The position numbers and the translations under genes were made by a program. Shown here piece by piece: positions 32,432 through 36,556 of a DNA stretch of 64,000 bases; positions within the stretch are counted from its first letter, which is position 1; each line of letters begins with the position of its first letter. This stretch comes from Paragordius varius (taxonomy: Eukaryota; Animalia; Nematomorpha). The DNA is taken from assembly GCA_964247055.1 (NCBI GenBank), contig OZ176052.1:682001-746000 (forward strand). The letters run 5' to 3'. The notes beneath the pieces are model-generated. The model was not told the DNA's origin and did no database searches. It saw only the letters and a list, made by a program, of their open reading frames with translations.

Positions 32432-34278
32432 TTAAAAACGGTGTTGAATAGGTGCTCTCGCTATAAGACCAGTCTTAAGTAAAACTTCAAACGGAGAGTT
32501 TTTTTCCTCGTTTGAATTTTCATTTTTATGATTAATCGTCTCAGGTCCGTAATATTCAATTCTTTGTCCATTGATGTCCGTTAAAGTGCCCCCCAAGGTA
32601 TCTAGCAAGGCATTTCCTGCACAAATGTCCCATTTCTTAATGTAAGTCGTATGTAAGTAGTATTGAGCATGTCCATTAAGTAATTCCAAAACTTTGTAAC
32701 CTAAAATATTCAATTATAAAATAAGGTTTATATGTGCAATGAGGGAAAACAAAAAGCTTTGGGGTTTTATTATAAAAAGTAAACATACACACACAATTTA
32801 CTAAAAAATGTAATTTAAAAGTATTTATAACATAAATTACTTAAAATATATGTAAATTATAGATTAATAAGATAATTTACTTAAAATATATGTAAATTTA
32901 ATTAGATTTATAACATAAATATACATTAAATATGTAATTATATATTACAATCGTTGGGGTAATAAAAACAAACAAACAAAAAAATAATTTAAAATTTTAA
33001 TTTTTAGCCAATACCACACATGAAATCAATCAATTATAAAGTAGTGCTTTTTAATTTTGAGTTGTACCAGCATTCAAGTTATAATAAACGATAATCATTT
33101 TTTTTGTTTAGACAATAGTAAACTAAACTAATTTTTAAACTTGAAGCCAAATTTAGTACTAAATTACACTTTTTGGAATTTTTAAAACCCATTTTTTATC
33201 CCAAAAATGCTAAAACATCTATATATATCATTTATATTTTAAATTCACCCTTGAACATTCACCCTTCACCCTCGAACAATTCAAATTCACCCTTCACCCT
33301 CGAACAATTCAAATTCACCCTTGAACATTTCAAAATCACCCTAAAAGAAATTATGAGTTTTTTAAGATGAAAAATTACATATATTTCTTTATTAGGAAAT
33401 GAAATCATGTTAAAAATTAATATAATGCTGAAAAATATATTTCTTATAAATGATTATTTATATTAGCCCAAAAACACATAATTTATTTTTAGGATGAATT
33501 TGAATTGTTCAAGGGTGTGAATTTGAATTGTTTAAGGGTAAATTTGAATTGTTCAAGGGGGTAAATTTGAATTGTTTAAGGGTGAATTTGAATTAAATTT
33601 GAACTGTTTAAGGGTGAATTTGAATTGTTTAAGGTTAAATTTAAATTGTTTAAGGGTGAATTTGAATTGTTCAAGGGCGTGAATTTGAATTGTTTAAGGG
33701 TGAATTTGAATTAAATTTGAACTGTTTAAAGGTGAATTTAAATTGTTCAAGGGTGTGAATTTAAATTGTTCAAGGGTGAATTTAAATTGTTTAAGGGTGA
33801 ATTTGAACTATAAATAGTATACATCCCTAAATTTTTAAGGCATACCTGCACCCCCGGCTGGAATTATACGCATATTTGAATTTTCATTATTTTCTTCTGC
33901 CGCTGCTTGATTAGTCAAGTCAACCAATTTATTTGATTTAGATTTCGAGTTAAAGTTTGAGTTTAACAATTCCTTCGTTAAAATTTGTTGAGCGACGGAA
34001 TTTATATTGCCAGGGTGTGAACGTGAGACTAGAACTTTTATACTTGGTTCATTTCGTTGACTAAAAATTAAAAAGTAAAAAGTCAATTATTTTCAGTATA
34101 AAAACAGATAAAGACAAAAAAAAAGAATAAAGAAAATATTAATTTTATAAATTTAATCTAGAGTAAAAATTGAAATTATACGTGAGGACAAAACGTAAAA
34201 ATATAAAGACAAAAATTTTTTTCCCTAAAAAACAATTAACCATACTTTTTAAATCTTCGTTCATTTTTTTAAATCTAT

Positions 34279-34344
<66 letters not shown>

Positions 34345-36556
34345 AAAACAATCTATATGATATTTTACCATCCTTTATTGAATAGCTCATATAGGAAAAT
34401 TTAAGGTAAAAAGTATGGTTGTGTTTTGGAAAAAAATATTTATTATATTATTACGTTTTGTCCATAGTATAATTTTAATTTTTACTGTAATTATTCCAAA
34501 TACCACATATCTGTGATTTAAGTGAGTAATTAATTAGATTTAAATTTCCCTATTTCACAATTGGTTCATAAAAGTATGGCTGTTCTTTTAATGTAAATAT
34601 TTGTCTTTTAATAGTTTTTGCGTTTTTTGGTTAAATTTTAAAATTTTTACTGTAATTCCTTTTCACTATCCGTATTTATATCGCTTGGAGTAAATTGATT
34701 GTTGTTTGATTTCAAATCATCCAAATTGGGTGAATATGTATGATTAACCCAACCCCAATCTATATAGCATAGTATAAAAATAAAAAATTTAATTTTTAAG
34801 TAAAAAACGTAATATTTTTGTTAAATTCAGCCAGATTTTTAAAAGTTTTAAAAAAAATTATAAATTTTGGGACTTAATTTTTTCCATAACCGTCAGTTTT
34901 TTGTGAATTGCTTTATCAAAACGCAAAATTAATTAAAATCATAATTTAGGTTTATCTTTTTGTGTATTTATAATGAGATTAAAATTGAAAATAAATGATT
35001 TTTTACCCACATATGGCCCTATTAATAATACAATGCTAGAAATATTTTTTATTTCCTTGGCTTACTTATACTGACTTAAAAAGTTTTCGGAAGCTTATAT
35101 AAAAGGATTCATTATTAACATGAATAAATCTTTTATAAATTTGGAAAAGTACATACTATAATCAACACGAGGTAAGTAATTTTGAGGCGTTTATTATAAA
35201 TAATTGTAGATATATAATTTAATATTTTTTTCAAATTCTGAGATATTACAAAATCAATTACATGTATTTTCTTCAAGGTCTGGCGTTTGAAATGGTTTAT
35301 AGATTACACCCATAATAGGTCGACCTTTAACCGCAACACATACCATAGTTGTAACATATTCCAATAAGTCTTCTGTAAGAAATATATATATATATATATA
35401 TTAGTTAAAAAACATAAAGACAAAACGTAAAAACTAGAGACGAGATATAGATATTTTTGGAAAAAAAGACAACCATATATTCGAGAACCTTAATTTTTTA
35501 TAAAGTTATCGCTTTCGGTTGCTAATAAAGCAATCTAAATTGGTATCACACCATAAAAACCATTTTACAATTATATTTATACTGTATTTTATTAAGAAAA
35601 AATCAAGGTTTAAGAAAAATTATAGTTAGTAAATGAATAAAAATTTTTTTATCTTTTACTTTTTATGTTTTGTCTATTTTATACTGTAAAACAATAAGCT
35701 TTTTATATAAAAATTTGTCCTGAATCAATTAAAGGTAAAACTACCATGATTATAGATTAATATTAAAATAAGAGGGGTAACTATAAATACAAATGGTATA
35801 TTTAATTAAAAATTATTGATGTCATAAAATGATAAAGACCATACATAATAAATAAACGAATAATGTTTTATTTGTAACGAAAACTATATTTTTTAATCCT
35901 TAATTTTTGCTTGATAACTATATCCATATTTCGCAACCCAAAAACGTTAGATATTTATAAAAAAAAATTAATATATTTGAAGATTGATGTTTTATTCTCT
36001 TTATAATTTTTTATTAAACAATATATAAAAACCCGTATATTCCTGCGTTGCATCTAACGGATCAATCCATATGGCAATATCGGATTGAGAAACAAATTCT
36101 TTGGATATTTTTGGTATTTGAGGTAATTTTAAATCAATTTTAACATCTTTTGCACTGTATTGTTCTTCTGATACAATCTATTATATGATTAATGGTTAAA
36201 AGCATATATACTGGTATATTGGGGAAAAAATTCCGAATAGTTTTTATCATTGCAATATTAGAGTATAAATCTCCATCAGTCAAGGGATCATTCGCACCTT
36301 CTTTCGTCTTTCCTTTACTTTTTTGATGTAATTTGTGTTGCTCTTTGATACTTTTGACGTAGGCGCCACCATTTCTTGCAGATAAAATGCAAACTGAAAG
36401 TAAATCATTTAAATCAATTTTTTCATTGAGATAAAGATTTGTTTGATAAATACTGTTTTTATATTTAATTAAAAATATAAATAAAACGAGAAAAACTATA
36501 AGAACTAAAACCACATTTTTTCGTAACATACCGTGCCTAGCTTTATGTAGTGGCAT
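32432..36556 (-). CDS. IMPAD1: Golgi 3'-phosphoadenosine 5'-phosphate phosphatase (inositol monophosphatase family)
   Basis: Exons 36212-36556 (signal anchor, [14 protein letters not shown]), 36033-36177 ([14 protein letters not shown]), 35262-35372, 34651-34759, 33846-34060 (VSRSH, PAGGAG), 32432-32700 ([12 protein letters not shown]); 397 aa. Confidence 0.95.
33229..33817. mobile_element. Foldback MITE family B with short arrays in both arms
   Basis: Left array 33241-33343, right array 33494-33810. Confidence 0.85.
34094..34652. mobile_element. Nested MITE family A: old outer copy with younger copy at 34161-34487
   Basis: Outer ends cagtataaaaacagataaagacaaaa (degenerate) and aaatttttactg-TA; inner copy has central (TA)n. 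Confidence 0.75.

What the first reader, a model, noticed from the sequence alone, without database searches (positions are those of the whole stretch)
34061..34654. IMPAD1 intron 4 takes its 5' splice site from a MITE terminus: candidate transposon-made intron
Seen: the exon 34651-34759 must end in phase 2 to join the only nearby acceptor (34061). The only phase-2 GT before an in-frame stop is TA-CA|GTAAAAATT, the family A terminus, so the last two coding bases and the donor are MITE-derived. A degenerate opposite end at about 34094 means the outer MITE (with a nested younger copy) fills all but about 33 nt of the intron. From memory, human BPNT2 has five exons with introns matching introns 1, 2, 3 and 5 here but not this one (needs checking). 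Inference: either introner-like intron gain by a palindromic MITE that occurs at least a dozen times in this window, or takeover of the donor of a tiny pre-existing intron.
Basis: partly seen in the sequence, partly recalled or inferred. Interest (0 to 1): 0.8.

Follow-up and report, generated by a model that had tools for sequence, protein, structure and literature searches.

The report
Transposon-made extra intron in IMPAD1
In this very AT-rich worm genome, the Golgi phosphatase gene IMPAD1/BPNT2 has one intron that a priapulid, a crinoid and several arthropods lack; it consists almost wholly of a small jumping-gene copy whose own end supplies the splice start, so it is very probably a transposon-made intron in an animal, though no RNA could be reached to show the splicing.

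Summary
The minus-strand gene is a six-exon IMPAD1/BPNT2 orthologue. Homology fixes the frames of exon 4 (WGWVNH) and exon 5 (IKVLVSRSH). The only phase-2 GT before the stop is at 34650, bases 3-4 of a Tc1/mariner-type MITE (TA duplication, CAGTAAAAATTG...ACTG ends, about 294 bp, at least 2,327 first-look matches in the genome). The only AG between the upstream stop and exon 5 is TTTTTAG at 34061.

New here:
- Introns 1, 2, 3 and 5 sit at the same position and phase as in Priapulus, and in the crinoid Anneissia (its intron 3 on the acceptor side only). Intron 4 is found in none of ten orthologue loci, so it is a lineage-specific gain.
- The MITE, with a younger nested copy, probably reaches within 0-12 nt of the acceptor rather than 33.
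- One rival junction avoids the MITE donor (GT 34666 with AG 34035). Its acceptor is poor and it drops the conserved IKV.

Best reading (about 0.68): the MITE landed in a continuous exon and is spliced out from its own terminus. The micro-intron-first rival gets about 0.15. No RNA or second hairworm genome was reachable. The scan has flagged similar cases elsewhere in this genome; I did not test them. This is a known kind of event (introner-like), new for this lineage.

The parts
32432..36556 (-). IMPAD1/BPNT2 orthologue with six exons: E1 36556-36212, E2 36177-36033, E3 35372-35262, E4 34759-34651, E5 34060-33846, E6 32700-32432 including the stop
   Evidence: Exon 1 hits named Golgi-resident PAP phosphatase / inositol monophosphatase 3 proteins at E about 1e-12. 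Exons 1, 2, 3 and 6 hit PF00459 in colinear order. All exons align to orthologues.
34651..34759 (-). Exon 4 (109 nt, enters in phase 1, leaves in phase 2). It encodes (Y)WGWVNH...SEKEL plus CA. Its last two bases, CA, are MITE bases 1-2, and the TA before them is the target-site duplication.
   Evidence: WGWVNH aligns with Priapulus WGWVDH and with W[AGS]W[VAI] in all orthologues.
34061..34650 (-). Intron 4, 590 nt, GTAAAAAT...TTTTTAG, phase 2. It is absent from all orthologues examined.
   Evidence: The RNA folds into one long hairpin, MFE -140.9 against -77.8 +/- 5.3 for shuffles.
34490..34654 (-). Outer family-A MITE: TA duplication (34654-53), 5' terminus CAGTAAAAATT (34652-42) and 5' arm plus inner part up to the nested insertion. 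The donor GT is MITE bases 3-4 (34650-49).
   Evidence: 39 other genomic copies match at 75-83%, nearly all from query base 1 to 6. Identity to the family consensus is 87% over 83 columns. nhmmer is marginal on its own, E = 0.01-0.03.
34159..34489 (-). Nested, younger family-A MITE (34487-34161, 327 nt) with TA on both sides and a (TA)n run inside
   Evidence: Its arms are 95-96% identical to the consensus. nhmmer E = 3.9e-46.
34073..34158 (-). Degenerate 3' part of the outer MITE. The end is uncertain: 34073-75 is best, with 34094 or 34061 as alternatives.
   Evidence: TTTGTCTTT at 34118-34110 is the exact partner of AAAGACAAA at 34606-34598, and spacing predicts an end at 34066-34070. A local alignment for the other register gives p of about 0.012. 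Arm identity is not above shuffles.
34061..34072 (-). Pyrimidine run and acceptor, TTTAATTTTTAG, at or just beyond the MITE 3' end
   Evidence: This is the only AG between the in-frame stop at 34089 and the exon 5 coding start.
33846..34060 (-). Exon 5 (215 nt): (H)[15 protein letters not shown]...IIPAGGA(G)
   Evidence: IKVLVSRSH and PAGGAG align with the orthologues.

Best explanation
A family-A Tc1/mariner-type MITE of about 294 bp inserted at a TA inside what was one continuous exon, today's exons 4 and 5. That exon encodes the variable linker between the WGWV strand and the IKVLVSRSH strand of IMPAD1/BPNT2.

The element is not read through. It is removed as a spliceosomal intron. U1 uses the GT at bases 3-4 of the element's own terminus (TA-CA|GTAAAAAT). 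The T-rich 3' terminus of the element serves as the pyrimidine tract, and the first AG at or just beyond it (TTTTTAG, 34061) is the acceptor. A few linker codons were exchanged for one His codon (CA|T).

A second family-A copy later landed inside the new intron. The palindromic copies fold into a long hairpin that brings the two splice sites close together.

Shown here: the gene model, the phases, the family termini with their TA duplication, the nested copy, and the absence of this intron in outgroups. Inferred: the actual splicing, the exon-insertion order of events, and any role for the hairpin.
For: (1) Frames fixed by homology leave GT 34650 as the only phase-2 donor and AG 34061 as the first and best acceptor.
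(2) That GT is bases 3-4 of a genuine MITE terminus: TA plus CAGTAAAAATT, with 39 other genomic copies matching nearly all from query base 1 to 6, and the family defined.
(3) Priapulus has introns at exactly the position and phase of hairworm introns 1, 2, 3 and 5 and none at intron 4. The crinoid agrees, with its intron 3 resolved on the acceptor side only. A barnacle, a beetle, a mite, contig L045 and four intronless loci also lack it.
(4) Introns 2, 3 and 5 sit at ancestral positions and their donors do not read as a family-A terminus, although intron 2 holds a family-A copy. Only the extra intron starts at a MITE end.
(5) MITE sequence fills 94-100% of the intron.
(6) With the 3' end at 34074 or 34071, both within the modal range, the reconstructed empty site is an open, in-frame exon (ELLIFSQR or ELIFSQR). 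This is my own reading of the sequence.
(7) The gene is single-copy, and its conserved motifs are intact in every exon.
Against: No RNA evidence for the junction could be reached, and there is no retrocopy that would show it. No second hairworm or nematode gene structure was reachable, so the gain is dated only as 'after the split from the priapulid lineage'.

The 3' arm of the outer MITE is not statistically demonstrable and its end is uncertain. The in-frame reconstruction therefore works for only some of the plausible ends, roughly a one-in-three chance. Ends at 34094, 34073 or 34061 give out-of-frame or stopped empty sites unless small indels followed.

A rival junction, GT 34666 with AG 34035, keeps the frame without the MITE donor. 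The linker is unalignable, and a beetle and a barnacle have their own phase-0 introns nearby, so the region may be prone to intron turnover.

My small screen of 65 family termini found no excess of open frames abutting them. I therefore have no independent evidence that the family does this repeatedly.
Confidence: 0.68

Rival explanations
1. Micro-intron first, donor takeover second. A tiny intron of 22-35 nt, of the kind common in this genome, already existed here. The MITE then landed in the exon just upstream of it or at its 5' edge, and the MITE's terminal GT replaced the old donor. The old exon tail and the old intron are now the 3' end of intron 4.
For: The genome does hold micro-introns; intron 1 of this same gene is 34 nt. 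If the MITE ends at 34094, the remainder is 33 nt, which is micro-intron size. That register has some support (local alignment p of about 0.012). Earlier notes of the scan describe 'micro-intron plus one MITE' introns, which I did not test.
Against: None of ten orthologue loci has an intron at this position and phase. The micro-intron I could check, intron 1, sits at an ancestral position, so it is a shrunken old intron and not a new one. The remainder, whether 33 nt or 12 nt, contains no GT. Anchored alignments and palindrome spacing favour an end at 34066-34075, which leaves 12 nt or less, too little for an intron. The scenario also needs two events where one suffices.
Confidence: 0.15
2. 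The MITE donor is not used. The intron runs from GT 34666 (phase 1, ATA|GTGAAA) to AG 34035 (AAAAG|TT), giving ...INTD-I-LVSRSH. The MITE is then only cargo inside an intron bounded by flanking cryptic sites. This would still most likely be an intron created by the insertion, but not one bounded by the element.
For: The pair keeps the reading frame. It gives a linker of about 24 residues, nearer to the 17-31 seen in orthologues.
Against: The acceptor is AAG with no pyrimidine run. It lies downstream of two other AGs, including the strong TTTTTAATTTTTAG. All four ancestral introns of this gene end in TAG or CAG. This junction would also delete IKV, which matches GIKII in Priapulus and NIKVI in Diabrotica.
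Confidence: 0.1
3. The gene model or the assembly is wrong at this point: either the MITE insertion has disabled the gene, or the region is misassembled and there is no functional junction.
For: No transcript evidence exists. The linker and the low-complexity inserts are unusual.
Against: All six exons keep open frames and the catalytic and structural motifs ([38 protein letters not shown]). Four introns keep ancestral positions with GT-AG ends. The gene is single-copy, so no other copy could cover for it. The outer MITE is old, 87% identical to the consensus and carrying a nested copy, yet the frames remain open.
Confidence: 0.05

Closest known systems
Introners / introner elements (Micromonas, Aureococcus and many other eukaryotes; in animals reported from copepods, tunicates and a sea urchin). 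Sources: PMC9860276, PMC12130899, review PMC11282704.
   Same: Both involve a short non-autonomous DNA transposon with terminal inverted repeats and a target-site duplication. It lands in an exon and is removed by the spliceosome, with one splice site carried in the element's own end and the other taken at or beside the insertion site. The intron position is lineage-specific.
   Different: Here I can show one intron of one gene, not a family of near-identical introns across many genes. The copies are old and diverged (about 70-87%). Most copies I saw are not obviously in exons. Because of the TA / CAGT...ACTG geometry, precise removal of element plus duplication is impossible, so a few codons had to change. 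No RNA evidence is available.
MITE-derived introns of the tunicate Fritillaria borealis (Henriet et al. 2019, as summarised in PMC11282704)
   Same: This is an animal case in which MITE insertions are thought to have become introns, and in which base-pairing within the intron brings its ends together.
   Different: The Fritillaria introns have non-canonical ends (AG-AC, AG-AT) and need an altered spliceosome. The intron here is a plain GT-AG intron.
Stowaway-like MITEs of the Tc1/mariner/pogo superfamily (from my own knowledge of the superfamily: TA target duplication, CAGT-type termini)
   Same: TA duplication, CAGT...ACTG termini, long inverted arms, about 300 bp, no coding capacity, thousands of copies.
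   Different: No autonomous partner element was looked for, so the assignment to the superfamily rests on end structure only.
'Micro-intron plus MITE' long introns of this same genome (earlier notes of the scan, unchecked)
   Same: Introns 2, 3 and 5 of this gene may be of that kind: ancestral positions, with MITE cargo at least in introns 2 and 5.
   Different: Intron 4 is at a non-ancestral position, and its donor is inside the MITE terminus rather than upstream of it.

Membership tests
Tc1/mariner-type (Stowaway-like) MITE, 'family A' | TA target-site duplication | tested here: met
   25 of 28 copies have TA next to the 5' end, 15 have it next to the 3' end, and 14 have both. The outer copy has TA at 34654-53. 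The nested copy has TA on both sides.
Tc1/mariner-type (Stowaway-like) MITE, 'family A' | Terminal inverted repeats with conserved termini | tested here: met
   The consensus runs CAGTAAAAATTGAAATTATACGGACAAAACG...CGTTTTGTCCGTATAATTTCAATTTTTACTG. Copies match in both orientations.
Tc1/mariner-type (Stowaway-like) MITE, 'family A' | Short, non-coding, high copy number | tested here: met
   The consensus is about 294 bp. There are 2,327 first-look candidates in the 110.6 Mb genome (a lower bound) and about 21 loci in this 64 kb window.
Tc1/mariner-type (Stowaway-like) MITE, 'family A' | A related autonomous element with a DDE/D transposase sharing the termini | not tested
   Not searched.
Introner (intron-generating transposon family) | The element carries or creates functional splice sites and is spliced out of mRNA | not testable with these tools
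   No RNA data or retrocopy was reachable. Splicing is inferred from frames and conservation only.
Introner (intron-generating transposon family) | The intron position is absent from orthologues, so it is a recent or lineage-specific gain | tested here: met
   It is absent from Priapulus, Anneissia, Amphibalanus, Nicrophorus, Varroa, L045 and four intronless loci, while Priapulus and Anneissia share the other four introns. No close relative was available.
Introner (intron-generating transposon family) | Many similar introns of the same family in unrelated genes | tested here: inconclusive
   A screen of 65 termini in the window and fetched loci showed no excess of abutting open frames, and the top five did not look coding. 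Earlier notes of the scan list several further candidates in this genome, which I did not check.
IMPAD1/BPNT2 (Golgi-resident PAP phosphatase, inositol monophosphatase 3) | Inositol_P fold (PF00459) with the DPxD...WD motifs | tested here: met
   Exons 1, 2, 3 and 6 hit PF00459 colinearly at profile positions 5-63, 66-99, 103-128 and 199-242. The summed score is about 95 bits; only exon 6 alone passes the 27-bit cut-off. [22 protein letters not shown](Y)K and IKKWDICAG are all present.
IMPAD1/BPNT2 (Golgi-resident PAP phosphatase, inositol monophosphatase 3) | N-terminal membrane anchor (type II) and best hits to named IMPAD1/BPNT2 proteins rather than to IMPA1/BPNT1 | tested here: met
Exon 1 has a hydrophobic stretch, [16 protein letters not shown]. 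Its best named hits are axolotl Golgi-resident PAP phosphatase and arthropod inositol monophosphatase 3.
IMPAD1/BPNT2 (Golgi-resident PAP phosphatase, inositol monophosphatase 3) | Ancestral five-exon structure | tested here: met
   Four of the five hairworm introns coincide in position and phase with those of Priapulus, and with those of Anneissia (its intron 3 on the acceptor side only). The human gene was not fetched.

The most novel reading that the evidence does not exclude
Family A is a working introner of a horsehair worm. Its palindromic ends carry a ready-made donor (TA-CA|GTAAAA) in either orientation and a T-rich tract at the other end. Insertions into exons are therefore tolerated again and again, and they have added introns to many genes of an animal whose old introns had shrunk to 22-35 nt. 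The element's hairpin would let a spliceosome tuned to micro-introns handle a 300-600 nt insert. That would make Nematomorpha a further animal lineage, and to my knowledge the first parasitic one, with ongoing transposon-driven intron gain.
Probability: 0.3. Interest if true: 0.8.

Novelty: new member of a known kind. Interest (0 to 1): 0.6.

Why it matters
How new spliceosomal introns arise in animals is still argued, and well-supported animal cases of transposon-made introns are few. In the papers read here they come from copepods, tunicates and a sea urchin.

This case has an unusually clear before-and-after. A five-exon gene structure conserved from a crinoid to a priapulid carries exactly one added intron, that intron is nearly all MITE, and its splice start is the MITE's own terminus.

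If RNA data confirm the junction, and if the other candidates flagged in this genome hold up, this small (110 Mb), micro-intron-rich genome would be a good system for two questions: how a DNA transposon becomes an intron, and how intron size classes coexist.

Tried and rejected
- **Transcript evidence.** I looked for a processed retrocopy or second copy of IMPAD1 that would show the spliced junction. There is none; only a 39% paralogue on another contig.
- **A close relative.** Exon 1 against 1.84 billion representatives gave at best 49% identity. A profile search that included the hairworm exons as separate rows listed no hairworm among its best 120 hits. No second nematomorph structure could be had.
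- **Vertebrate structure.** The axolotl gene spans 236 kb and no DNA was returned. Hyalella had no gene on record. The human gene was deliberately not fetched.
- **The 3' end of the outer MITE.** nhmmer does not see the 3' arm. The last 109 nt have no other match in the genome. Arm identity for ends at 34094, 34073 or 34061 is not above shuffles. Local and anchored alignments disagree. I therefore give a range, not a point.
- **Reconstructing the empty site as a test.** It is in frame and open for ends at 34074 and 34071. It is out of frame or stopped for 34094, 34073 and 34061. I rejected this as decisive evidence.
- **A small screen for other exon-abutting termini.** 65 termini gave nothing above background.
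- **The joined (spliced) protein** was never assembled, searched or folded. All protein work was done exon by exon, by reference.
- **One Pfam call failed** on wrong coordinates and was repeated correctly.
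Full report
**What is there.** The window is about 25% G+C and belongs to a 110.6 Mb genome. Earlier notes of the scan take it for a horsehair worm; I did not test that identity.

On the minus strand, between 36556 and 32432, lies a six-exon gene:

| Part | Coordinates | Note |
|---|---|---|
| Exon 1 | 36556-36212 | |
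| Intron 1 | | 34 nt, phase 0 |
| Exon 2 | 36177-36033 | |
| Intron 2 | | 661 nt, phase 1 |
| Exon 3 | 35372-35262 | |
| Intron 3 | | 502 nt, phase 1 |
| Exon 4 | 34759-34651 | |
| Intron 4 | 34650-34061 | 590 nt, phase 2 |
| Exon 5 | 34060-33846 | |
| Intron 5 | | 1145 nt, phase 1 |
| Exon 6 | 32700-32432 | includes the stop |

Exon 1 alone finds named Golgi-resident adenosine 3',5'-bisphosphate 3'-phosphatase / inositol monophosphatase 3 proteins (axolotl, beetles, crustaceans, a crinoid) at E of about 1e-12. Exons 1, 2, 3 and 6 hit Pfam Inositol_P in colinear order. Every exon aligns to the orthologues, with the family motifs intact.

**The junction.** Homology fixes the frame of exon 4 (WGWVNH; Priapulus has WGWVDH) and of exon 5 (IKVLVSRSH).
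- Read through, exon 4 stops at 34649-34647.
- Its four GTs have phases 1, 0, 1 and 2, and the phase-2 one is at 34650.
- Upstream of exon 5 the frame is closed by TAA at 34089. The only AG between that stop and the coding start is TTTTTAATTTTTAG at 34061, which needs a phase-2 donor.

I add two alternatives.
- AG 34043 also takes the phase-2 donor, so it does not change the point.
- The phase-1 pair GT 34666 / AG 34035 would keep the frame without the MITE donor. I rate that pair at about 0.1. Its acceptor is AAG without a pyrimidine run and lies behind two other AGs, whereas all four ancestral introns of this gene end in TAG or CAG. It would also delete IKV, which is conserved (GIKII in Priapulus, NIKVI in Diabrotica).

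**The element.** The donor sits in TA-CA|GTAAAAATT.
- The 11-mer CAGTAAAAATT (one mismatch allowed) occurs 25 times in the window, against 10.6 +/- 3.4 in shuffles.
- The flanks show one family: about 294 bp, ends CAGTAAAAATTGAAATTATACGGACAAAACG...ACTG, long inverted arms, and TA on the outside.
- These are the hallmarks of Tc1/mariner-type MITEs (my knowledge of the superfamily). I did not look for an autonomous partner.
- The genome search gave 2,327 first-look candidates, a lower bound. nhmmer finds about 21 loci in this window.
- The copy at the exon boundary is old but real. Starting at its TA, the first 85-92 nt match 39 other copies elsewhere at 75-83% identity, with a best E of 2.7e-12. 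On its own against the family profile it is only marginal (E = 0.01-0.03).
- A younger copy (34487-34161, arms 95-96% identical to the consensus, TA on both sides) is nested inside it.

**Where the outer copy ends.** This is the weak point.
- The 3' arm is too decayed to stand out from shuffles, and it has no other match in the genome.
- Anchored full-length alignments of 28 copies in both orientations end at 34073-75 in 28 of 56 cases and at 34094-95 in 3.
- The exact partner of the 5' arm's AAAGACAAA is TTTGTCTTT at 34118-34110, as paired in the predicted fold. By palindrome spacing this puts the expected end at 34066-34070.
- I conclude that the MITE fills the intron to within 0-12 nt of the acceptor (best estimate) or 33 nt (alternative). 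The acceptor's T-run is therefore probably the element's own T-rich terminus.

**Is the intron old or new?** I mapped intron positions and phases in orthologues for which genomic DNA could be fetched.

| Orthologue | Introns |
|---|---|
| Priapulus caudatus | Five exons. Phase 0 at FPDLV\|VISEE; phase 1 in the codon after EYT; phase 1 in the codon just before WGWV; phase 1 at AGGA\|GY. No intron in the linker. |
| Anneissia (crinoid) | The same four. For intron 3 only the acceptor side is resolved; the donor side is in an assembly gap. |
| Barnacle | Shares introns 1, 2 and 5. Has its own phase-0 intron at K\|VLVS. |
| Beetle | Shares introns 2 and 5. Has its own phase-0 intron elsewhere in the unalignable linker. 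|
| Varroa | No intron in this region. |
| Chelicerate-like contig L045 | Has introns 1, 2 and 5. None in this region. |
| Four further loci | Intronless. |

The four Priapulus introns are hairworm introns 1, 2, 3 and 5. No orthologue has a phase-2 intron nine codons before KVLVSRSH. The same ancestral structure is shown here for a priapulid and a crinoid.

Intron 4 is therefore an addition on the lineage of this worm. It is also the only one of the five introns whose donor lies in a MITE terminus, although intron 2 also carries a family-A copy.

**How it most likely came about and works.** The simplest history is one event: the MITE landed at the TA of a Leu codon in the linker-coding part of a single exon, and has since been removed as an intron.
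- The donor is its terminal CA|GTAAAA.
- Its T-rich far end is the pyrimidine tract.
- The acceptor is the first AG at or just past its end.

The geometry TA[CAGT...ACTG]TA cannot restore the original sequence, so a few codons had to change. If the element ends at 34074 or 34071, the reconstructed empty site reads as an open, in-frame exon (ELLIFSQR or ELIFSQR in place of today's ELHQR). Other plausible ends do not, so this is consistent with the history but not evidence for it.

The intron RNA is predicted to fold into one long hairpin (-140.9 kcal/mol against -77.8 +/- 5.3 for shuffles). This would bring the splice sites within a few dozen unpaired bases of each other. Whether that matters for a spliceosome that also handles 34-nt introns is speculation.

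**Rivals.**
- Micro-intron first, then donor takeover (0.15). It fits the genome's habits and a 33-nt remainder. But it needs an earlier, separate gain at a non-ancestral site, the remainder has no GT, and the better-supported MITE end leaves too little room.
- The non-MITE junction (0.1). See above. Even then the intron would most likely have been caused by the insertion.
- A dead gene or misassembly (0.05). This is unlikely for a single-copy gene with six open, motif-bearing exons around an old insertion.

**Comparison with what is known.** Transposon-made introns (introners) are established in many eukaryotes. They are mostly MITE-like DNA elements with inverted repeats and target duplications, each giving one splice site. 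In animals they are reported from copepods, tunicates and a sea urchin (PMC9860276, PMC12130899, PMC11282704). Fritillaria has MITE-derived introns with non-canonical ends (PMC11282704).

This case works like an introner, but I cannot file the family as one. I have one intron, no RNA, and a small screen of 65 termini showed no excess of coding flanks. The scan's earlier notes list several similar candidates in this genome. They are unchecked by me and count only as leads. None of the papers I searched mentions such introns in Nematomorpha, which is weak negative evidence.

**Verdict.**
- The donor-takeover rival is weakened but alive.
- Splicing itself is unproven.
- This is a new member of a known kind of event.
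- Interest is 0.6, rising if RNA data and a genome-wide count show that the family does this often.

Noticed in passing
window 36178-36211 (minus strand): Intron 1 of IMPAD1 is only 34 nt. It sits at the ancestral phase-0 FPxx|VISEE position, where Priapulus has 1,947 nt, the crinoid 799 nt and the barnacle 566 nt. It is a shrunken old intron, not a new one.
   Followed up: partly
window about 33250-33810 (intron 5); also L034 and L040: A large palindromic element built from about 21-nt units (TTCAAATTCACCCTTAAACAA and its complement) fills much of intron 5. The same unit array sits inside family-A MITE copies at two other genomic loci, so it is a composite or second MITE family.
   Followed up: no
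window 35418-35677 (intron 2): A family-A MITE copy (nhmmer E = 5e-11) lies inside the ancestral intron 2. The donor of intron 2 does not read as a family-A terminus, which makes it a useful internal contrast to intron 4.
   Followed up: partly
window 34061-34082: The last 22 nt of intron 4 read as three 7-nt units (CTTTTTA CTTTTTA ATTTTTA) plus G. This may be a small tandem duplication of the MITE's T-rich end, and it may be why the 3' end cannot be fixed.
   Followed up: no
window 33846-34060 and 32432-32700: Compared with all orthologues, exons 5 and 6 carry lineage-specific low-complexity inserts rich in Asn, Ser, Lys and Glu, about 25 and about 17 residues long. The linker around intron 4 is about 18 residues longer than in Priapulus.
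   Followed up: no
G000:C6:8032732-8032911 (L054): This is the only other match in the genome to IMPAD1 exon 6 (39% identity, open frame of 90 aa). It is presumably a BPNT1- or IMPA-type paralogue.
   Followed up: no
window 34285-34340: A (TA)n microsatellite of about 28 units lies at the centre of the nested MITE copy. Similar (TA)n runs matched the centre of the family query at several other places in the window.
   Followed up: no
L045 (Logan SRR21069281, 1,160 nt contig): An unidentified invertebrate, whose nearest named proteins are from spiders, has IMPAD1 introns 1, 2 and 5 at the ancestral sites but lacks intron 3 as well as intron 4. Introns there are 53-72 nt.
   Followed up: partly
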